Positions 1 through 12,708 are shown, counted from the stretch's first letter. The stretch: 13,121 nt of DNA from Vitrella brassicaformis CCMP3155 (GCA_001179505.1 CDMY01000882.1:1-13121), one strand, 5' to 3'. Notes: generated by a model from the sequence alone, not told the origin. Numbers and translations are program-made.

Positions 1-306
1 CGCTGCTGCGGTGCGATTTTAGCCCTCCACCCACCGGCAGCACACACCTGTAAGAACCAGCTGACGTAGTCAGTTGATTTAGTTGGCCTGTCGTGTCTGT
101 CCTTGGTTCTCTTGGGCTTTGAAGTGGTTGTGTTGGGGTGGGTGAGAATCGATGGCTTCCTTGTCGGCCCCATGGAAGGCTTGGCCTTTTGCCACCCACT
201 GGCTGACTTGACTTCGTCGCCGGCCAAGCACGCAACGATTTGCGTGATGGACTGATGCCCCTGTGTGTGTTTATCGCGGCTGGGTGCGTGTATGACTCAG
301 ATGCGC
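1..306 (+). repeat. Left copy of a long inverted repeat, truncated by the window start; partner at 8578-8883
   Basis: 1-306 is the ungapped reverse complement of 8578-8883 (position i pairs with 8884-i). Manual alignment gives 7 substitutions (~97.7%). The ORF track echoes it: MRDGLMPLCVFIAAGCVYDSDA (240+) vs MRDGLMLLCVFIAAGCVYDSDA (8644-). Confidence 0.95.
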
Positions 307-1022: not shown

Positions 1023-1091
1023 ATGATGACTCGCGTGTGGCGTGTTTGGCTCATCACTCTGCTGACGGTGCTTGTCACTCGTGCGGCTGCC
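1023..1091 (+). other. Signal peptide coding region
   Basis: MMTRVWRVWLITLLTVLVTRAAA followed by QEAEEG: basic N-region, hydrophobic core, AxA cleavage site. Confidence 0.85.
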
Positions 1092-3078
1092 CAAGAGGCC
1101 GAGGAGGGACGTGAGTGGTGAGTCACTCAGTCAGTCACTCACTCAGTCGGTCAGTCCATCACACTCTCTTTCATCTCACAGGTGTGGTGCTGCGGCCGAA
1201 GAGGCATTGCCTGCCTGGGACTACTGCGCTGACGGTGGCAATCCCGTGACCGTCGAGGTCAAGGCGGTGAGTGGCCCGAACCTCGACCCTTCCAGTGACG
1301 TCTTCCTCAAGCTCGTCGGCACCGAAGGAACAACACAAGACATCCGAATCGCAAGTGAGTATGTCACACACACAATGACAGTCTTTCACTCGGCCGCTCA
1401 CTGTCTGCCTGTGTGATGGATGCGTGTCAAGGTGAGGAGGGCGGCACCAAGCGTCGGGTGCAGACGAGTGCGGCTGATGTTGGGCCGCTGGAGGCGGTGA
1501 TAGTGCGGAGCGACAGCAAAGACAAGGCGGCTCACTGGCGCTGCAAGACCATCACCGTCTTCAGCTACTACCGATGGTTCCAGTGCGGCTGCACCGACGA
1601 ACTCTCCGCCGCATCACCATCAGCCGTACGTAACTAACGCATCAGACAGGCGTCCATGCGCACCATGTCTGTCTGTGTGTTGTGGTCAGGAGTACACGTT
1701 GAGTGCGAGTGAGCCCTACGAGGTCACCATCGAAACGGGCGGAGACGACAAAGGTCAACCACACACACACAGCACAACACAACACAACACATGAAGGAAT
1801 GAGTGCACTTCCCTCTCTGTGTCTCTGTGTGTGTGTGTGTGTGTGCAGCGAGTACACAGGGCAGCATCACCGGCGGCACGTCTGCTCACGTGCGCATCCG
1901 GGCGACCAGTGTGGGCAAGATCAAGGCCATCCGCCTCACCAACACGGCCGCAGACGACCCGTGGTTCTGTGACACTCTCAAGCTCAAGCGCCAGGACGGC
2001 AGTGCCGTGAGCTTCCGCGTGCGGCGATGGATCGGCACACCGTACCCCACGACGGCAGAGGTGGGGCTGGGCGAGGAGTCCGGCAGCTGTCACATCAGCT
2101 GCCGGACTCGACTCATCGGTGCCACGGGCAGCACGACACCAGAGGGCCCCAACATGATCAAAGTAACCACACCTGCCGGCCTGCCTGCCCGACACACCTG
2201 ACACATGGATCTCTCTGTTCTGTGTGTGTCATGTGTCTGTTGTGCCGGTCAGGTGTTGTGTCCGTCCAACTACCAGGCAGACGAGGCGCAGTTTGTGTCC
2301 TCGTCCATCTGCGGCGCCACTCTCATCGTCACGGTTTGCAACCACACCAACCACACGCAGCAGCAAAAATACATCACTCTGTCTGTCTCTCTCTGTGTGT
2401 GTGTGTGTGTGCGTGCAGGAGGTCTCTTCATTGGGGACTTTGGGTGAGTTCACGGAGGCGAGTGCCCGGAAGGCGTGTCGGGATATGGGCTGTCATGACG
2501 TCGAGGGGGAGTACTACTGCGCCGTGGCCATGGGCGGCATCCACTGCAAGGGCGACGAGGAGAGCTTCCTCAAGTGCACCTTCGACGTCAAGTGCACCTT
2601 TGGCGCCAACCACATCTTGGACGTGGCCGTCATGTGCACCAACAACCCGCCCGCCAAGACACCCGCCAAGGGCACGCTGCGCATCCTCTCCGCAGCCGGC
2701 GCACACGCCAACGAGGGACGACTCGAGGTGAGAGAGCTAGTGAGGTCGTGGGCATGATCACACACACATACACACACATTCACGCCACGATTTCAATGAT
2801 ATGTCATCCATCTCCATCTCCATGTGTGTGCGTGTGTGTGTAGGTGTATCTGCCGAGCCGTGACCTGTCCAAGTGGTGGTCGACAGTGTGCGACGACAAC
2901 TGGATGGCCGCGAGTGAGCGCATCGCCTGCCTCCAGATGGGCTACGCGGGTGCAGCCAGGGGCGGCGCACACAAAGAAAGCTGCACCGACTACAAAGGAG
3001 TGAACGTATGCGGACCCGCCGGCACAAGGTCAATGCACCACTCACAAAATGGACAGAGAGAGAGGCAGATATGAATGT

Positions 3079-3109
<31 letters not shown>

Positions 3110-6100
3110 GTTTCAGGATTATCTGCCTGATGGACTTCATGTGCGACGGCAGCGAATCACAACTCCTCCAATGCCCATACGTAATTACGTGGACATCCGA
3201 CACACAACACACACAAATGCATCATGCATTTGTGTGTGTCCATCCCTCCATTCCGTTCATCTGTCATTCAGACGACGGGCAGCGACATTTACTGCTCCCA
3301 CGACGAGGACGTTGTCGTGTCGTGTGAGGGCGACAACGGCGATCCCTCGGGCAGCGGACTGCACCAGAAAGACCCCCCGCCCACATTCGTCCACTACTCA
3401 TTCCCCCCCAAGACAAAACTCACTTGCTCCGACACCATCGCCAGCAAGGTAGGTCCACACACACACACAGAGAGAGAGAGAGGAAATGCATGTGATATGT
3501 GTGTGTGTTGATGCAGCTTGGCGGCGGTGGGTTGGTGGGCACCACAGTGGTGGCGACGTGTGAGGGCAGCTGCAGTGATGCAGGGGTCCAAGTGGTGGGG
3601 ACGCTCATCTACAGCGAGGCATCCCCCGTCTGCAAGGCTGCCGTCCATGCTGGCGTCATTGGCGACGGCGGCGGCGACGTCACCCTCACCCTCAAGCACC
3701 CCATCCACCATTACACCGGTCAGTCAGTCTGCCTCACACACACCACACCACACTCGTGGACTGTGTGTGTGGATGTGTGTCGTGGATGCAGGCACTAAGC
3801 GAGGCGAGATCACTTCTGTGTCGGCCGACATCGACGGCAGCAAGAGCTTTGTCGTCTCACGCCCGACGCCAAACGTGCTGGCGCGCCTTGCCGAGACCAA
3901 GCAGCCGCACTATGCCGGCGTGGGCGTCCCCCCTCCCACCACAAGCACAGCCACGACGGCCACGTCCTTCATGGAGGTCAGTGCCACGTCTGCCGCTGCG
4001 CCCACCGCTCTGCCGCACCCGCGGTACGCGCCCGTTGGCTGGCACGGATTCAATGGCGACAACTGGATCGCCGCCAGCGACCTGCCGGGTACAGTACCCT
4101 CACCCCGACACAACACAACACAGCCAACGACACTCCACTGCACTCGTGTGTGTGTGCGTCAGATGCTGACAAGGTGCGTGGGCTGACGAGCTTCTCGGTG
4201 GCGTGCCGTGTGCGTGTAATGGGCGAGCACACACACCGAATCAGCAACGGCTTCAGCCAGTGCAACGGCTTCAGCCTTAGTGTGGGTGACAACGACGAGC
4301 TGGTGTTCGACCAGATCTGCAGCCCATCGCCCGGCGTGACGTCGGGCAGCCGTGTCACCTACTTCCAACCAGGTCAACCACAATCCATCCAACACACACA
4401 CACACACACACGTGTCTGTGTGTCCATGTGGTTAACCAACGATGCAGAGAAGTATGTGGCCATGTACGTCAACGGCCTGGCCACCGACTTCGAGTTCGAG
4501 CTGACCACCCGGCTGGCCATCGGCCGCCTGAGTGGCGACATCACGGCCGTCCACATATACGACTATGTCCTCTCACAAGACGACGTCAACAAGGTGACTG
4601 ACTGACCACACGTGTGAGCGCATCACACGTATCACATCACACTCCCTCTCTGTGTGTGTGTGTGTGTCAGGACATGGACATGTCGTTTGAGCATCCCTTT
4701 GGCGGTGTGGGCACCTCCCGCCGACACACGACCGACGGCCGTCTCTGCACATCTCCGTGCAAGACCTCCCCGCCCCCTCCCGCCACATGCAACGTGACGA
4801 CCGACTCGCTCGGCGGCGGGCGCGTGTCGATGCGCCGGCCGCACCCGCGATACGGCAAGCTCACCACTCGTGTCCTCTTTGGAATCCGCGAGAAGTCAGT
4901 TTCGGCCAGCCCTGCAGGCAGGCACTTCCCGGCATCCATTGTGCAGGACCTCAACGATGTCAGAGGTCAGCCAGCCCATCACCCACAACAGATACAGACA
5001 CACAGACGTGTCTGTGTCTGTCAGAGTATGAGCACAATAGTGGTGGGCAGGGCATGGACGACTCTGACGTCTCGCCGAAGTTCGGTCCCTCCTTAGGCTT
5101 CGGAAAGTCAACGGTACAGACAGACAGACAGACAGAGGCATGGCTGTGCTGCTGTGTTGTGCACAGGGTGTGATCCCTTCTGTCGGCGCGATCGTCCCCG
5201 CGTGGTTCAACGAGATGGTGGTGCGGCCGATCCAGACTCAATGTGCGTAAGGAGATGCGTACACTACACAGGCACACACACATGATTGTTGTTTGACTGC
5301 GTGTGCCTGTGTAGTGTGGCTGCCACGCGTTACCAGGACCCCCACTGACACCACCACCACAGCCACAGCCACAGCAACCACCGCCACGGCCCCGGCCACC
5401 ACCCCTGCCACAGCCACCAACAGAAACCAGCGTCGCAGGGGCAGGCGCGGCCGACGAGGGGGGGGTGCCGTCGGTCAGGTCCGTCGGTTCGTCGATAGAA
5501 CCATCGTCAATCCGGGCGAGACCGAAGAACAGAGAGGTGAGTCGACTGAAGTGACACACGCCACATCATACTCATATCTCTCATGTCTGTCTTTGTCTCT
5601 CTGTGCGTGTGTGTGTGAAGTCGCGAGACACATTCGTCAAACAGCACTTCGAGCGTATAGAGAAATCACCGCAACCCCCGGCTTCAGATTTACGACTGTC
5701 AACATCCACACAACCCCCCCCACAAAAGACACCGACACACATGAGATGTCACGGTGGTGTTTGGTGTGTCAGATAACTGCAGAGGCGCTCGGATGGGAGC
5801 TGCACGACGCGACCCGCGCCCGGGCACCGGCCGGTGCCCGGCGCATGGCCGTTGCCTTCCAGATAACCCCGAGGTGGGACACGCAGCATGCACACGTACA
5901 CACTAGGCACAGCTGCCTCACGCCGAGTGAAACGTTGATGTGTCTCCTCTCGCTGCACAAGGGCGGCCGGATATTTTGAAGTCATGGAGAATCGAGATCT
6001 GACCGAGCAAGAGCTGGACGCCATCAATCGCTTCTTGCAACAGCTGGTGGCGGCGGCAGGTAAGGACACACACGGTAACACACATAACCCTTGTATGTGT

Positions 6101-6364
6101 ATGCCCGTGTGTGTGTGTTTTTTTGTTCAGACGCGTGAAGCGCACTCATCCCACACTCCACACCAACACTCAACCTCGTCAGCTCCGCACGTGCCACAGA
6201 CACGACACAGAGAGACAGACACACCAGCACAACAATGAATGCAGCCGTGTCTGTGTGTGTGCGTATGTGTGTGTGTGCAGGTGTTTGGTTCGACGCTGAC
6301 TGAGTCCAATGCCGACATCGTCTCGTGGGGCATCGACGACGTCACAGTGCACCTGCAGCAGTGA
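1023..6364 (+). CDS. CCp3: Secreted LCCL/scavenger-receptor multidomain adhesin, CCp3/PxSR/LAP1-like, divergent and possibly degenerate. Exons: 1023-1117, 1182-1354, 1432-1625, 1690-1753, 1849-2162, 2253-2333, 2419-2727, 2844-3028, 3117-3180, 3272-3448, 3517-3718, 3792-4088, 4163-4372, 4448-4593, 4671-4965, 5025-5113, 5167-5242, 5315-5536, 5621-5697, 5773-5873, 5962-6059, 6131-6177, 6281-6364
   Basis: Manual GT-AG model with 22 introns of 53-116 nt; all phases are consistent. It gives 1158 aa to TGA 6136-6138, or 1199 aa to TGA 6362-6364 if that stop is read through. Contains a signal peptide, PLAT, SRCR, LCCL and pentraxin motifs (below). The order PLAT-LCCL-SR-SR-LCCL-pentraxin matches the CCp3 family as I recall it. 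Exons after ~4966 are less certain, and the symbol denotes family likeness, not proven orthology. Confidence 0.75.
1244..2040 (+). other. Two PLAT/LH2 domains (exons 2-5); the second is internally shortened
   Basis: First: VTVEV..SDVFLKLVGTEGTT..DVGPLEAVIV..HWRCKTITV. Second: YEVTIETG..ASTQGSI..SVGKIKAIRLTN..DPWFCDTLKL..SFRVRRWIG. Both fit the PLAT pattern. Confidence 0.8.
2419..3330 (+). other. Two scavenger-receptor cysteine-rich (SRCR) domains (exons 7-10); first partial, second complete
   Basis: SR1: ARKACRDMG..IHCKGDEESFLKC..DVAVMC. SR2: GRLEV..WSTVCDDNW..IACLQMGY..FMCDGSESQLLQC..CSHDEDVVVSC. Confidence 0.9.
3517..3860 (+). other. Intact LCCL domain (exons 11-12)
   Basis: CEGSCSDAGVQVVGTLIYSEASPVCKAAVHAGVIGDGGGDVTLTLKHPIHHYTG/TKRGEITS..SFVVS matches the C-xxx-C..GT.IY...S.VC.AAVHAG LCCL signature. 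Confidence 0.92.
4030..4593 (+). other. Pentraxin/LamG-like (concanavalin A-like) domain (exons 12-14)
   Basis: GWHGFNGDNWI..LTSFSV..FSLSVGDNDELVF..VAMYVNG..LAIGR..GDITAVHIYDYVLSQDDV. Confidence 0.75.
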
Positions 6365-6975
6365 ATCGACGGACGGATGAATGGATGGACTGACTGACAC
6401 AGAACTGACTGACAATACGATAGATGCATGGGCGATGGTGGAAGTGAAAGACGAATTAATGGCGGTGCATGATTGTGCATTCAATCGATTCACGTCACAA
6501 CACACACAAAAGTCACACCAGCAGGCCATCAGTCCAACACACAACACAATATATACAGGCCTCGCATGCAGCAGCAGACGTACAGAAAATTGTTGAATGG
6601 ATGTCTTGATGCCTCAGCGTCGGTCGATGGCCTGCCTGACAGACGGACCATTTGCATGCGTCTGCGTGATGATCAATTGCTCGTGTCTATCCATACCAAG
6701 AGTCTTCACTCACTCAAGTGCACACACATACACGTGCATACATACCCACAGAGAGAGAGAGAGAGTGTGTGTGTGCACCCCGTCCGCCATGATGCACACC
6801 CCCATACGGAAAAACCCTTCCTGGCTGCCTGGCTGTCTGTCTGTCTGTCCTGCTACCCATTCACCGCTCTCCCTCCCCCCGCGCGCCACACCATGCCCCC
6901 CAGCACAATCGTCACGGCAGTGCACGCGATGCACCCGATGCTCATGGGAAAGCGACAAAACGGTAAAGCCCGCGA

Positions 6976-8577: not shown

Positions 8578-8883
8578 GCGCATCTGAGTCATACACGCAC
8601 CCAGCCGCGATAAACACACACAGGAGCATCAGTCCATCACGCAAATCGTCGTGTGTTTGGCCGGCGACGAAGTCAAGTCAGCCAGTGGGTGGCGAAACGC
8701 CAAGCCTTCCATGGGGCCGACAAGGAAGCCATCGATTCTCACCCACCCCAACACAACCACTTCAAAGCCCAAGAGAACCAAGGACAGACACGACAGGCTA
8801 ACTAAATCAACTGACTACGTCAGCTGGTTCTTACAGGTGTGTGCTGCCGGTGGGTGGAGGGCTAAAATCGCACCGCAGCAGCG
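8578..8883 (-). repeat. Right copy of the long inverted repeat (partner 1-306); outer boundary unknown
   Basis: Reverse complement of 1-306 with 7 mismatches and no gaps. Homology ends sharply inward after ...GACTCAG ATGCGC. Confidence 0.95.
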
Positions 8884-9860: not shown

Positions 9861-10342
9861 AGCAAGCCACACAGATGCCTCGGATCGACCTTTGTGTGCT
9901 CGTGGTGCGCATGTGTGTCTTGGCGGTCCGGGGTGATGTGGTGTGAAGCGGGCCGCACCCAAAACCGCCAAAGCAGGAGAGGAGCAGTGAGTGAGTCTGT
10001 GGGTGCAGTAAGGTAAGCCTATACATCCATATACAGCACATGGTGAGTGGAGTAAGTCGAATAAATACGCAGTCAGTCAGTCAGTCAGTCGTCGACATGG
10101 ATGCACACACACATCTCACGCACTGCACCCAGCCGCACTCACCCAGGCCCCTGACCGACACCATCCATCCATCCATCCACACTCCACCAACCGACCTCCC
10201 GCCCCCGACAAGCACCACCACCACCACCAGCAACCGATTGTTTCGGTCAACGAGAACACCGCCGACGCACATAAGAAGTAGACAGACGGGGAGTAGACAG
10301 CGACAGACACACCACACCCACGCACACGAACGAAAAGGGAGT

Positions 10343-10451
10343 GTCCGCACCATACGGAGGGACGAGAAGAAAACGAGAAAGCGGCGTCCGCACCATACGG
10401 AGGGACGAGAAGAAAACGAGAAAGCAGCGTCCGCACCATACGGAGGGACGA
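10343..10451 (+). repeat. 43-bp tandem repeat, ~2.5 copies
   Basis: Unit GTCCGCACCATACGGAGGGACGAGAAGAAAACGAGAAAGC(G/A)GC at 10343-10385 and 10386-10428, with a partial copy at 10429-10451. Confidence 0.92.
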
Positions 10452-10714
10452 AAAGAATACGACAAAGGAGAAGAAAAGGCAACGGGTAGGGCTGCTGACT
10501 CAAACGCAATACAATACAACACACTAATTAACAAAGGTACATCCATACCATGGACAAAAACAAAAAACAGCCATCCTCCCCCGTCTGTCTACGTATGGAG
10601 GCGCGGGGGCCTCTTCTCGTGGTGGCAGTGGGTGGTGGGTGGTGGGTGGGGTGCTTCTCGTCGGCGGAGAGGGCACAGACGCTGCGGGCGGGCCGATGGC
10701 CGAACGACTTCAGC

Positions 10715-11014
10715 NNNNNNNNNNNNNNNNNNNNNNNNNNNNNNNNNNNNNNNNNNNNNNNNNNNNNNNNNNNNNNNNNNNNNNNNNNNNNNNNNNNNNN
10801 NNNNNNNNNNNNNNNNNNNNNNNNNNNNNNNNNNNNNNNNNNNNNNNNNNNNNNNNNNNNNNNNNNNNNNNNNNNNNNNNNNNNNNNNNNNNNNNNNNNN
10901 NNNNNNNNNNNNNNNNNNNNNNNNNNNNNNNNNNNNNNNNNNNNNNNNNNNNNNNNNNNNNNNNNNNNNNNNNNNNNNNNNNNNNNNNNNNNNNNNNNNN
11001 NNNNNNNNNNNNNN
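10715..11014. other. Assembly gap (300 N)
   Basis: Run of N. ORF-track entries crossing it are not real translations. Confidence 1.
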
Positions 11015-11084: not shown

Positions 11085-12558
11085 CTCCCGAAGCGCCGAA
11101 GATGACATGTTGACTCCTTGAGTGTTCGCCGGGCGGGAGGCCGCGAAGAGGGGCCGGAAACCGGTTGAGTCGAGCTGCACGTTGAGGCCGCGGCGGGACT
11201 TGCCTGTGGCGACCGCCAGACGGACACCACGGCGCCGCAGGGCATCAAGGAAGTTGCGAGACCCGTCGAAGGGCTTGACCTGACGAAAGACAATGCAATT
11301 GGGACCCATTGCATTGAGTCGATCGAGACATGAATGTATGAAGTGTGAGTCGATCGATGTACATACCTGTGTGTGTCTCGATTTCCCTCCAGTGTGTGCG
11401 GTATGTATGCGGCCTTGATCTCTTCGTGCGTCTCTTGGTCATCGTCCGGACAGAGCACCAGGGGCACGTCATCGATCGACAGGCCAATCGTTTGGCGAAT
11501 CTCTCTCTCCAGACGCCTCTCGTCCATCGGCGGATCAGGGTCATGTCATCGTCACAATCGCCAGAACCATCAGCCGCCTGCCGTCTCCTCTTGTTGTCGC
11601 GAGCGGTCTTCTTGCCCTCCTTGACGGCCCTCACCCAGCACCGGATGATCGACGTCACCGAATCGACCACAGTGCCATCCCTGGTGGTGCACAGCACACG
11701 CAACAACCATTGCGGTGGCACGTGCATACACCGCTGCACACCTGCCCGGGTCACCCACTTACCAGTCGAAGCAGACGCACCGCAGGACGGGCTTGTCGGA
11801 CACCGCCTCCCTCACATCGTGGCCGACACTGTCAGCCGCCTTGTCATGACACGGAGTGGGGTGCGGAGAGGGAGGGGCGCGGTCGGTCTGCACTGATGCC
11901 GCCGCTCGGAGGCCGAATGGTGCAGTGGCTGCGGAGGGAAGGTGGGGCGGCTGCTGGGTGTCTCGCTCGTAGTAGAGCTGGCCTTCCTGTGTGGGCTGCT
12001 GTGACCAACGGGTCTGCCGGATGGCCTCGCCCGTCAATCGCCGAGTGACCAACGGGTTTGCCGGATGGCCTCGCCCGTCAATCGCCGAGTGACCAACGGG
12101 TCTGCCGGATGGCCTCGCCCGTCGATCGCCGAGTGACCAACGGGTTTGCCGGATGGCCTCGCCCGTCGATCGCCGAGTGATTAAGGCCCACAGGCGGATT
12201 GCTGGCATGCGGCCCGGCATCTACAGCGCAGAGACGGCACTCCCGCGGCCTGACACAACCACTCTGACCTGCACACACACACGTGACAGCCATGAGAGCA
12301 CAACAAGAGATGAGAGATGACCTCCGCCGTGTATGTGTGTGTGTGTAGGTCTCGTACCTTCCTCCTCCCAGGCAAGAAGCGGGGAGTCGTAGAGGGATGG
12401 ATGAGTGAATGGGCGGCGGCTGACTGCAGCCGGCCTGCAGAAGGACAACAGGCAGACAGACAGACAGACGAGGAGCTCAGAGAGGTCGACCACATGTGTC
12501 TGTCACGTGTGCACATGTGTGAGTGTTCGCTTGTGTGTGTACCTGGATGAGCAAACAT
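11085..12558 (-). pseudogene. HAD-superfamily (subfamily IA, phosphoglycolate-phosphatase-like) hydrolase with multiple lesions; 3' end lost in the gap. Exons (- strand): 12558-12543, 12434-12358, 12268-11763, 11680-11367, 11279-11085
   Basis: Motif I is split by an intron (CVCFDW|DGTVVDS). Cap helix EIRQTIGLSIDDV and motif II region VKPFDG..LRRRGVRLAVATGKSRRGL are present. Lesions: in-frame TAG at 12221-12223, frameshifts near 11544, 11401-11408 and ~11370. Assembly error next to the gap cannot be excluded. Confidence 0.75.
12001..12180. repeat. 44-bp minisatellite, 4 copies plus 4 nt, inside the HAD exon
   Basis: Unit GTGACCAACGGGT(C/T)TGCCGGATGGCCTCGCCCGTC(A/G)ATCGCCGA starting at 12001, 12045, 12089 and 12133. 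No spacers. Confidence 0.97.
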
Positions 12559-12610: not shown

Positions 12611-12708
12611 CTGAAGCAGCCAACCGACCAAAGACATCCGTGCATTGCATGTGTGTGTGCGCCAAATGCATGTCCGTATGTACAGCCCTGCAGGCCCTGC
12701 GTACTTAC
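12611..12708 (-). other. Probable 5' UTR intron of the HAD gene
   Basis: On the - strand: ACCG|GTAAGT...GGCTGCTTCAG|GCTG, 98 nt, with a (CA)-rich interior like the other introns. Confidence 0.55.

What the first reader, a model, noticed from the sequence alone, without database searches (positions are those of the whole stretch)
1118..6280. Introns carry self-complementary arms instead of polypyrimidine tracts: possible RNA-structure-assisted splicing system
Seen: most of the 22 introns are AC-rich in the 5' half and GU-rich in the 3' half, and the pairing often includes non-repeat bases. Examples: 3207-3221/3225-3239 (perfect 15 bp, ACACACACAAATGCA); 4988-5001/5008-5021 (14 bp, one G-U, ending at the CAG); 2760-2779/2822-2841 (18 of 20 Watson-Crick plus one G-U); 6066-6075/6105-6114 (ACACACACGG, 10 bp, with an inner 7-bp stem); 6195-6204/6246-6255 (CACAGACACG, 10 bp); 4376-4382/4427-4433. 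The HAD intron has one too (11291-11316). Intron 1 lacks the arms and has a conventional pyrimidine tract. Known: teleost introns with 5' (AC)n and 3' (GT)n pair and splice with reduced U2AF2 dependence. Inference: a convergent, possibly genome-wide equivalent in this alveolate. The unique bases may set register so a GU arm pairs within its own intron rather than across an exon.
Basis: partly seen in the sequence, partly recalled or inferred. Interest (0 to 1): 0.8.

Follow-up and report, generated by a model that had tools for sequence, protein, structure and literature searches.

The report
Polarised AC/GT repeat introns in Vitrella
The short introns of this alga start with AC-type repeats and end with GT-type repeats that could pair. 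The two ends turn up independently of each other, so the hairpins look like a by-product of a UG-rich substitute for the usual pyrimidine tract, not a proven structure-guided splicing system.

Summary

**What is there**
- The + strand gene (PLAT, two SRCR, LCCL) has 22 short GT-AG introns. Ten are seen spliced in RNA contigs.
- 21 of 22 are A+C-rich in the 5' half and G+T-rich in the 3' half.
- Genome-wide (72.7 Mb; an earlier scan note names Vitrella brassicaformis), (AC)5..(GT)5 outnumbers the reverse order 23:1.

**Why the pairing looks generic**
- Swapped arms fold as well as own arms, both here and in 125 modules on another contig. Reversing one arm costs about 1 kcal/mol.
- An upstream (AC)5 is as frequent before a non-complementary (CT)5-CAG end (5.9%) as before (GT)5-CAG (5.3%) or (GT)10-CAG (5.8%).
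- In an 85%-identical paralog, 31 of 42 substituted pairs are broken and 1 is compensated. The I5 and I9 'unique' stems are lost. Arms flip between GT and CT, and between AG and AC.

**Reading**
A-type repeats lie 5' and U-type repeats 3', and they assort independently. The (GU)n tract fills the nearly A-free zone before the 3' splice site. Hairpins are a likely by-product, and teleost-like structure-dependent splicing is not shown.

The scan has noted this pattern many times in this genome. One earlier follow-up reached the same verdict.

The parts
1023..6138 (+). Coding region of the host gene (signal peptide, PLAT, two SRCR, LCCL), 22 exons to the in-frame stop at 6136-6138
   Evidence: The model is frame-consistent. 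Pfam, searched exon by exon: PLAT 1.7e-7 (1851-2162), SRCR (2419-2727, 2844-3026), LCCL 2.4e-15 (3517-3717).
1118..1181 (+). Intron 1 (64 nt): no AC/GT arms, CAGT/CACT repeats, pyrimidine-rich 3' end
   Evidence: model only, no RNA junction
1355..1431 (+). Intron 2 (77 nt), weakly polarised
   Evidence: model only
1626..1689 (+). Intron 3 (64 nt), GT/GTCT-rich 3' half
   Evidence: model only
1754..1848 (+). Intron 4 (95 nt), AC/ACAAC 5' arm, (CT)n(GT)n 3' arm; bridging MFE -38.3
   Evidence: In the paralog much of the GT arm reads CT with no matching 5' change, and the MFE falls to -22.2.
2163..2252 (+). Intron 5 (90 nt); stem with unique CCGGC/GCCGG bases reaching the 3' splice site
   Evidence: The 5' side of this stem is deleted in the paralog.
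2334..2418 (+). Intron 6 (85 nt), AC-rich 5' half, (CT)n(GT)n 3' half, 40-nt A-free tract
2728..2843 (+). Intron 7 (116 nt); arms 2760-2779 / 2822-2841
   Evidence: The real fold (-33.3) is weaker than the arm-reversed control (-42.2).
3029..3116 (+). Intron 8 (88 nt), (AG)n 5' part and long (GT)n 3' arm
   Evidence: RNA contig X5. The paralog has (AC)n where this copy has (AG)n.
3181..3271 (+). Intron 9 (91 nt); local 15-bp perfect palindrome 3207-3221/3225-3239, followed by an ordinary pyrimidine-rich 3' end
   Evidence: RNA junction 3180/3272. The palindrome is not conserved in the paralog.
3449..3516 (+). Intron 10 (68 nt), (AC)n(AG)n ... (GT)n
   Evidence: RNA contig X5
3719..3791 (+). 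Intron 11 (73 nt)
   Evidence: RNA junction
4089..4162 (+). Intron 12 (74 nt), AC-rich 5' half with a short GT arm, weak fold (-12.0)
   Evidence: RNA junction
4373..4447 (+). Intron 13 (75 nt); stem 4376-4382/4427-4433 next to the donor
   Evidence: RNA contig X5
4594..4670 (+). Intron 14 (77 nt)
   Evidence: The paralog has 16 extra nt of CT/GT repeat.
4966..5024 (+). Intron 15 (59 nt); 14-bp hairpin 4988-5001/5008-5021 ending 3 nt before the 3' splice site; z = -5.1
   Evidence: model only
5114..5166 (+). Intron 16 (53 nt), (ACAG)n 5' half
   Evidence: model only
5243..5314 (+). Intron 17 (72 nt); 17-bp perfect stem 5261-5277/5301-5317 that covers the 3' splice site
   Evidence: The frame requires 5243-5314 (and reading); stem; z = -4.9.
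5537..5620 (+). Intron 18 (84 nt), ends AAG
   Evidence: RNA junction. The real fold (-17.3) is much weaker than the arm-reversed control (-30.3).
5698..5772 (+). Intron 19 (75 nt)
   Evidence: RNA junction
5874..5961 (+). Intron 20 (88 nt), AC-rich 5' half, no GT arm, ends AAG
   Evidence: RNA junction
6060..6130 (+). Intron 21 (71 nt); stem 6066-6075/6105-6114, then a T-run before the 3' splice site
   Evidence: RNA junction
6191..6280 (+). Candidate intron 22 (90 nt), after the in-frame stop, so probably a 3'-UTR intron; stem 6195-6204/6246-6255
   Evidence: An X5 contig stops matching near 6285. No listed junction.
11280..11366 (-). Candidate intron of the minus-strand neighbour, with the 9-bp palindrome 11291-11299/11308-11316
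   Evidence: splice sites read from the sequence only
12269..12357 (-). Candidate minus-strand intron with an AC arm 5' and a GT arm 3' in its own direction of transcription
   Evidence: read from the sequence only

Best explanation
The short spliceosomal introns of this genome carry dinucleotide microsatellites whose orientation follows a simple rule. A-containing, U-poor repeats, (AC)n and to a lesser extent (AG)n, occupy the part after the 5' splice site. U-containing, A-poor repeats, mostly (GU)n and some (CU)n, occupy the part before the 3' splice site.

The two ends are filled independently of each other.
- The 3' tract lies between the last A, which is usually in a YNAC-like context and is the probable branch point (inferred), and the 3' splice site. 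It is nearly free of A and of AG. I infer that it acts as this organism's equivalent of the polypyrimidine tract and AG-exclusion zone.
- The 5' tract is a GU-poor zone that offers few decoy donors. It may also act as a CA-rich enhancer (inferred).

Slippage keeps expanding, contracting and inter-converting the repeats. Selection keeps only their orientation.

Because (AC)n and (GU)n happen to be complementary, most introns can fold into a hairpin (predicted). That pairing is generic and 'slippery', it is not tuned intron by intron, and it is not what maintains the pattern.
For: Shown:
- Polarity in 21 of 22 introns, with composition A .36 / T .10 at the 5' end against A .08 / T .41 at the 3' end.
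- Genome-wide 23:1 order bias for AC..GT.
- The same order bias for NON-complementary pairs: AC..CT and AG..GT give 1553/1690 against 139/141 for the reverse order. AG..CT gives 274 against 42.
- (AC)5 upstream is equally frequent before (GT)5-CAG (336/6363), (CT)5-CAG (30/506) and (GT)10-CAG (92/1573). (AG)5 upstream is found in 119/6363 and 6/506. The odds ratio for complementary pairs is 0.56, p=0.24.
- Swapped arms fold as well as own arms. Reversing one arm costs only about 1 kcal/mol.
- Paralog at 85% identity: splice sites are conserved. The arms diverge 10.6-14.2%, with 0.16-0.24 indel nt per site, against 8.3% at third codon positions.
- In the same paralog, GT changes to CT in intron 4 and AG to AC in intron 8 without a matching change in the partner arm. 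Among pairs with substitutions, 1 is compensatory and 31 are broken.
- Runs without any A of 13-40 nt end at the 3' splice site in 14 of 22 introns. No AG lies within 19 nt of any 3' splice site.
- A U2AF large-subunit-like gene is present.
Against: - GU is preferred over CU about 12:1 next to CAG (6363 vs 506), while AC:AG at the 5' end is only about 3:1. So GU is favoured for a reason I have not identified. Pairing with the dominant AC arm is one candidate.
- There is a real, modest excess of true inverted repeats with non-repeat bases over complement-only controls: C22 10-mers 96 vs 59 and 12-mers 34 vs 12; window 25 vs 6 and 14 vs 1.
- A few stems (introns 5, 13, 15, 17) sit right at a splice site.
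- The pattern counts use perfect (XY)5 runs and a CAG anchor without any gene annotation. A co-enrichment below about 1.5-fold would have been missed.
- The branch-point assignment and the protein reader of the GU tract are inferred, not shown.
Confidence: 0.6

Rival explanations
1. Teleost-like structure-assisted splicing. The AC arm pairs with the GU arm as the intron is transcribed. The hairpin brings the two splice sites together and lowers or removes the need for U2AF2. The pairing is generic and needs no fixed register, which would explain the lack of covariation.
For: - The arrangement is the same as in zebrafish.
- Introns fold better than dinucleotide shuffles (mean z -1.5, 9 of 22 below -2).
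- In about half of the introns the MFE helix joins the first and last 15 nt.
- There is a small but significant advantage over arm-reversed controls in 125 C22 modules (-1.0 and -1.2 kcal/mol, p 0.04 and 0.006).
- GU is strongly preferred over CU at the 3' end.
- Paralog introns keep similar folding energy despite heavy turnover.
Against: - The co-occurrence that defines the teleost class is absent: 5.3% vs 5.9% vs 5.8%, odds ratio 0.56.
- Non-complementary AC..CT and AG..GT introns show the same polarity.
- Some introns fold much worse than their arm-reversed versions (introns 7 and 18).
- The GU arm pairs equally well with the next intron's AC arm.
- In the paralog an arm switches GT to CT with the MFE falling from -38 to -22, yet the intron keeps intact splice sites in both copies.
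- A U2AF2-like gene is retained.
Confidence: 0.22
2. A purely mutational by-product. This genome has very active AC/GT and AG/CT microsatellites. A transcription-linked or splice-site-linked mutation bias orients them, and they have no role in splicing.
For: The arms evolve at least as fast as synonymous sites and are full of slippage indels. Individual repeats are not conserved between paralogs. AC..AG..GT modules also occur outside modelled introns, for example 6718-6778.
Against: - A mutation bias tied to the transcribed strand cannot switch sign in the middle of a 53-116-nt intron.
- The switch tracks the splice sites on both strands.
- The GU tracts abut CAG 6363 times per strand against 1834-2794 for the mirrored control.
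- Orientation is kept while the sequence turns over, which indicates selection on orientation.
Confidence: 0.13
3. The introns derive from mobile palindromic elements (introners or MITEs) whose terminal inverted repeats are the arms.
For: Inverted repeats near intron ends occur in another alveolate, Amoebophrya. A few introns here have unique-sequence inverted repeats.
Against: The introns share only low-complexity similarity and form no families. Direct repeats at the boundaries are 0-3 nt in 21 of 22 introns (5 nt in intron 2), as expected from the AG|GT consensus. All splice sites are canonical. The arms are microsatellites, not fixed termini.
Confidence: 0.03

Closest known systems
Teleost and lamprey (AC)m-(GT)n structured introns (Lin et al. 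2016, Genome Res 26:12, PMC4691745)
   Same: AC repeats lie just after the 5' splice site and GT repeats just before the 3' splice site. The arms are complementary and can bridge the intron. Individual instances are not conserved. GT occupies the place of the pyrimidine tract.
   Different: In fish, AC and GT co-occur in the same intron above expectation, long runs with long runs, and U2AF2 independence was shown at the bench. Here co-occurrence is at the level seen with non-complementary CT ends. AG and CT repeats follow the same polarity. The introns are far shorter (53-116 nt). The GT-ended class is much larger: about 12,700 (GT)5-CAG ends in 72.7 Mb. The lineage is an alveolate alga. No biochemistry exists.
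Amoebophrya introner elements with inverted and direct repeats (Farhat et al. 2021, BMC Biol 19:1, PMC7789003)
   Same: An alveolate in which 8-20-nt inverted repeats between the 5' and 3' ends of an intron are proposed to form hairpins that join the exon boundaries.
   Different: Those introns are mostly non-canonical at their splice sites, carry 3-5-nt direct repeats across the boundaries, and part of them form repeated families. Here the splice sites are GT-AG, there are no such direct repeats and no families.
GT-repeat tracts acting at 3' splice sites in vertebrate genes, e.g. (GT)16 before the 3' splice site of human apolipoprotein A-II, as cited in Lin et al. 2016
   Same: A (GU)n tract directly upstream of the 3' splice site that supports splicing in place of a pyrimidine tract (Discussion).
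   Different: Those are single-gene cases. Here it is a genome-wide habit. The reader protein is unknown.

Membership tests
Teleost-type (AC)m-(GT)n structured introns | AC repeats enriched just downstream of the 5' splice site and GT repeats just upstream of the 3' splice site | tested here: met
   21 of 22 introns are polarised. Genome-wide 5430 vs 231. (GT)5 within 6 nt of CAG: 6363 per strand against 1834-2794 for the mirrored control.
Teleost-type (AC)m-(GT)n structured introns | AC and GT arms co-occur in the same intron above independence, long runs with long runs | tested here: not met
   P((AC)5 upstream) is 5.3% for (GT)5-CAG, 5.8% for (GT)10-CAG and 5.9% for non-complementary (CT)5-CAG. 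Odds ratio 0.56, p=0.24. Caveat: perfect runs only, no gene annotation.
Teleost-type (AC)m-(GT)n structured introns | The intron-bridging hairpin is specific to the intron (across the intron, not across the exon) | tested here: not met
   Own arms -23.8, swapped arms -22.4 (p=0.08), arm across the exon -23.2 kcal/mol. On C22, own -27.7 and swapped -27.5 to -28.6.
Teleost-type (AC)m-(GT)n structured introns | Splicing depends on the pairing (disrupt and restore) and does not need U2AF2 | not testable with these tools
   This needs bench work. As a natural proxy, the paralog shows 1 compensatory and 31 broken pairs among 42 substituted pairs. A U2AF large-subunit-like gene is present at G000:C201:36559-38014, at 167.7 + 74.6 bits in two pieces.
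Introner elements with IR + DR (Amoebophrya type) | 8-20-nt inverted repeats joining the 5' and 3' ends of the intron | tested here: inconclusive
   Perfect non-repeat stems of 10 nt or more lie wholly inside 3 introns (9, 21, 22). A fourth, in intron 17, runs 3 nt into the next exon. Most are internal, not terminal.
Introner elements with IR + DR (Amoebophrya type) | 3-5-nt direct repeats overlapping the exon/intron boundaries, and repeated intron families | tested here: not met
   Boundary slide is 0-3 nt in 21 of 22 introns. All-against-all blastn finds only CT/GT low-complexity matches.
LCCL-domain multidomain proteins (host gene only) | LCCL domain combined with SRCR and PLAT domains | tested here: met
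   Pfam, exon by exon: LCCL 56.9 bits, PLAT 32.4 bits, SRCR/SRCR_2 22-27 bits, just under or at the cut-off because the domains are split by introns. Orthology to a particular apicomplexan LCCL protein was not tested.

The most novel reading that the evidence does not exclude
Vitrella has replaced the polypyrimidine tract in a large share of its introns by a (GU)n tract that is read by a UG-specific factor or by a U2AF2 with changed specificity. Generic, register-free AC/GU zippering during transcription then helps to define very short introns. This would be a convergent, much more pervasive version of the fish system in an alveolate, and it would predict that GU, not merely U-richness, is required.
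Probability: 0.25. Interest if true: 0.75.

Novelty: new variant of a known kind. Interest (0 to 1): 0.45.

Why it matters
If the GU tract really stands in for the pyrimidine tract in thousands of introns, Vitrella would be a natural system for asking how 3' splice sites are recognised without a classical U/C tract. It would also allow a test of whether the fish AC/GT hairpin mechanism arose independently outside animals.

On the practical side, gene finders and splice-site models for chromerids should use the polarity (A-type repeats 5', U-type repeats 3').

The negative result matters too. Complementary intron ends alone are not evidence of structure-guided splicing. The CT-ended introns provide a built-in control.

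I found no paper in the searchable library that describes this feature of Vitrella introns.

Tried and rejected
1. Home-made gene finder. I built a periodic Markov model with Viterbi parsing to get an intron set that does not depend on composition. It recovered only 12 of the 22 known introns and made many false calls, so I did not use it. A minimal-intron dynamic programme also failed, because non-coding frames are often open in this GC-rich DNA.
2. More genome sequence. Sample-based tests therefore rest on 200 kb of contig C22 plus the window. Genome-wide tests rest on pattern counts.
3. RNA evidence. Only assembled contigs were on offer, and one run (X5) is evidently RNA. Introns 1-7, 14-17 and 22 have no listed junction.
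4. Forward-strand pattern counts are inflated by one match per start position. I used reverse-strand counts, which are anchored at CAG and give roughly one match per locus.
5. The unanchored 2x2 table of arm types cannot be resolved by strand. It gives only a lower bound on the odds ratio of 0.57.
6. The introner / MITE origin was rejected.
7. The idea that unique bases set the pairing register was rejected.
8. The dinucleotide-shuffle z-score discriminates poorly here, because the shuffles still contain complementary AC and GU dinucleotides (shuffle means around -20 kcal/mol).

Full report
**What is in the window**

The + strand carries a gene starting at 1023. I built its exon-intron model from reading-frame continuity and GT-AG ends. 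The model has 22 introns of 53-116 nt.

Contigs of one public run (X5) are spliced and show introns 8-13 and 18-21 removed exactly. The other runs hold the unspliced DNA.

Exon-by-exon Pfam scans find PLAT, two SRCR pieces and LCCL. The gene is therefore a real, expressed, multidomain LCCL-type gene.

- Intron 17 must be 5243-5314 to keep the frame.
- With the RNA-supported intron 21 the frame stops at 6136-6138, so 'intron 22' (6191-6280) lies in the 3' UTR if it is an intron at all.

**Checking the observation**

There is also a 17-bp perfect stem at 5261-5277/5301-5317 that covers the 3' splice site of intron 17.

21 of 22 introns have more A+C in the 5' half than in the 3' half. Positions +7..+30 are A .36 C .37 G .17 T .10. 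Positions -30..-5 are A .08 C .18 G .33 T .41. Exons are A .20 C .32 G .31 T .16.

Candidate introns of the minus-strand neighbours show the same polarity in their own direction of transcription.

In the whole 72.7-Mb genome, (AC)5 N20-50 (GT)5 is found 5430 times and the reverse order 231 times. The pattern reads the same on both strands, so this is a clean 23:1 polarity.

The scan has recorded the same pattern in more than a dozen other windows.

**Is the pairing more than composition?**

The introns fold better than dinucleotide shuffles (mean z -1.5). Those shuffles destroy the AC-then-GU arrangement, so the test says little.

Three sharper controls:
1. Arm swap. The 5' half of intron i against the 3' half of intron j gives -22.4 kcal/mol on average, against -23.8 for own arms (p=0.08). 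The GU arm pairs as well with the AC arm of the next intron across the exon (-23.2).
2. Arm reversal, which keeps composition, position and repeats. Real minus reversed is -1.2 kcal/mol, p=0.28. Introns 7 and 18 fold much worse than their reversed versions.
3. An independent sample. In 125 AC-then-GT modules on contig C22 (200 kb), real is -27.7, reversed -26.7 and -26.5 (p 0.04 and 0.006), and swapped partners -27.5 to -28.6.

So any AC arm pairs with any GU arm about as well as with its own. The idea that unique bases set the register within an intron is not supported.

A small residue is real. Non-repeat complementary k-mers are 2-4 times commoner within an intron than between introns (p 0.01-0.03). 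True inverted repeats exceed complement-only controls: C22 10-mers 96 vs 59 and 12-mers 34 vs 12; window 25 vs 6 and 14 vs 1. In the window this excess comes mainly from introns 9, 17, 21 and 22.

**Do complementary arms seek each other?**

While listing the C22 modules I saw that (AG)n often follows (AC)n and that (CT)n often precedes (GT)n. This gives a built-in control, because AC pairs with GU but not with CU.

Unanchored counts show that non-complementary orders are polarised too:
- AC..CT and its strand mirror AG..GT: 1553 and 1690, against 139 and 141 for the reverse order.
- AG..CT: 274 against 42.

I then anchored patterns on a CAG acceptor. I used reverse-strand counts, which give about one match per locus.

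| 3' end | Loci per strand | With (AC)5 15-45 nt upstream | With (AG)5 upstream |
|---|---|---|---|
| (GT)5-CAG | 6363 | 336 (5.3%) | 119 (1.9%) |
| (CT)5-CAG | 506 | 30 (5.9%) | 6 (1.2%) |
| (GT)10-CAG | 1573 | 92 (5.8%) | not counted |

The odds ratio for complementary against non-complementary arm types is 0.56 (p=0.24).

In zebrafish the class is defined by co-occurrence of AC and GT above independence, long runs with long runs. That feature is not met here.

A caveat applies. The counts use perfect runs and no annotation, and a few CT-CAG loci may be misoriented. An enrichment below about 1.5-fold cannot be excluded.

**Paralog test**

The genome holds a second copy at G000:C954:10127-12227, 85% identical over 2 kb including introns. 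I aligned introns 4, 5 and 7-14.

Fate of the 249 base pairs of the window's MFE structures in the paralog:
- 170 unchanged
- 37 hit by indels
- 31 broken by substitutions
- 10 kept by a one-sided change
- 1 compensated

Specific changes:
- The unique stem of intron 5 loses its 5' side.
- The 15-bp palindrome of intron 9 is not conserved.
- In intron 4 much of the GT arm reads CT in the paralog, with no change from AC to AG opposite. The MFE falls from -38 to -22.
- In intron 8 an (AG)n stretch corresponds to (AC)n, while the GT arm stays.

Splice sites are conserved. The arms diverge 10.6-14.2% and carry 0.16-0.24 indel nt per site, against 8.3% at third codon positions.

What is kept is A-type sequence on the 5' side and U-type sequence on the 3' side, not complementarity. 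Folding energy stays similar overall, because slippery repeats re-pair in new registers. Lack of covariation alone therefore does not kill a generic hairpin model, but it does kill the register idea.

**Most likely mechanism**

Confidence 0.6; steps marked as inferred are not shown.
- Slippage-prone AC/GT and AG/CT microsatellites fill these short introns.
- Selection fixes their orientation separately at each end.
- The 3' tract runs from the last A to the 3' splice site. That A often sits in a TCAC, TGAC or GCAC context 14-41 nt upstream and is probably the branch point (inferred).
- The tract contains almost no A and no AG within 19 nt.
- I read it as the functional counterpart of the polypyrimidine tract and AG-exclusion zone (inferred).
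- The 5' tract is poor in G and U, so it offers few decoy donors (inferred).
- Hairpins between the two are a by-product of AC being complementary to GU.

One point is left open. GU is preferred over CU about 12:1 next to CAG, while AC:AG is only about 3:1. This points to a GU-specific reader or to some benefit of pairing.

A U2AF large-subunit-like gene is present. I did not analyse its RNA-binding residues.

**Rivals**
- Generic teleost-like hairpin assistance: 0.22.
- Pure mutational by-product: 0.13. This one is weakened because a strand-linked bias cannot flip in mid-intron, and because orientation is kept while the sequence turns over.
- Introner origin: 0.03. There are no families, no boundary direct repeats, and the splice sites are canonical.

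**Novelty and score**

The kind is known from fish (PMC4691745). Hairpin-forming intron ends are known in the alveolate Amoebophrya (PMC7789003). I found no paper describing this in Vitrella.

It is a new variant of a known kind. It stands out for its scale (about 12,700 (GT)5-CAG ends, about 3,100 with ten or more GT units) and for the independence of its two ends.

The scan had already found it repeatedly in this genome. One follow-up (s1-226938) reached the same verdict by another route.
- the CT and AG control,
- the swapped-arm and reversed-arm controls,
- the paralog comparison.

Interest 0.45.

Noticed in passing
window 1-306 and 8578-8883: A 306-nt inverted repeat, 98% complementary, brackets the LCCL-type gene and the next minus-strand gene, with 8271 nt between the arms. 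The left arm starts at base 1 of the contig, so it may extend further or reflect an assembly join.
   Followed up: no
window 6131-6364: With the RNA-supported intron 21, the reading frame stops at 6136-6138.
   Followed up: partly
G000:C954:8627-13727 (L022): A paralog of the gene, 85% identical over window 2333-4784 and 79% over 1686-2297, introns included. It has about 390 extra bases where the window has 2297-2333 (end of exon 6 / start of intron 6). Similarity was not detected beyond window 4784.
   Followed up: partly
window 3045-3142 and 3206-3268: DNA contigs of runs X1-X3 skip 96 and 61 bases at the GT run of intron 8 and at the palindrome of intron 9 ('between: not known'). This is either a length variant or the paralog, or assembly collapse at repeats and hairpins.
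   Followed up: no
It has no evident splice sites on either strand, so such modules are not confined to modelled introns.
   Followed up: no
window 2076-2089/2096-2109 and 5820-5841: Perfect 14-bp and 11-bp hairpin-forming inverted repeats lie inside coding exons 5 and 20.
   Followed up: no
window 11957-12220 and 10329-10467: There are tandem repeats of 44 nt (about 5 copies, 97-98% alike) and of 43 nt (3 copies, 87-91%). The first lies in the region of the minus-strand gene.
   Followed up: no
window 10715-11014: A 300-base run of N (assembly gap or withheld stretch) sits next to the minus-strand gene.
   Followed up: no
window 12269-12357, 12435-12542, 12611-12708 (minus strand): These are candidate GT-AG introns of a minus-strand gene. 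They have AC-rich 5' parts and GT/GTCT-rich 3' parts in their own orientation. They were read from the sequence only, with no RNA check.
   Followed up: partly
G000:C201:36559-38014 (L025), minus strand: A U2AF large-subunit-like gene. Two pieces match TIGR01642 positions 142-266 and 295-510 (74.6 and 167.7 bits). A second, weaker locus is at C294:97096-97917.
   Followed up: no
genome-wide: About 1573 loci per strand end in ten or more GT units before CAG. That is close to the 12 guanosines that the pUG quadruplex fold preferentially incorporates (abstract of PMC12962679, seen). Whether such introns form that fold is untested.
   Followed up: no
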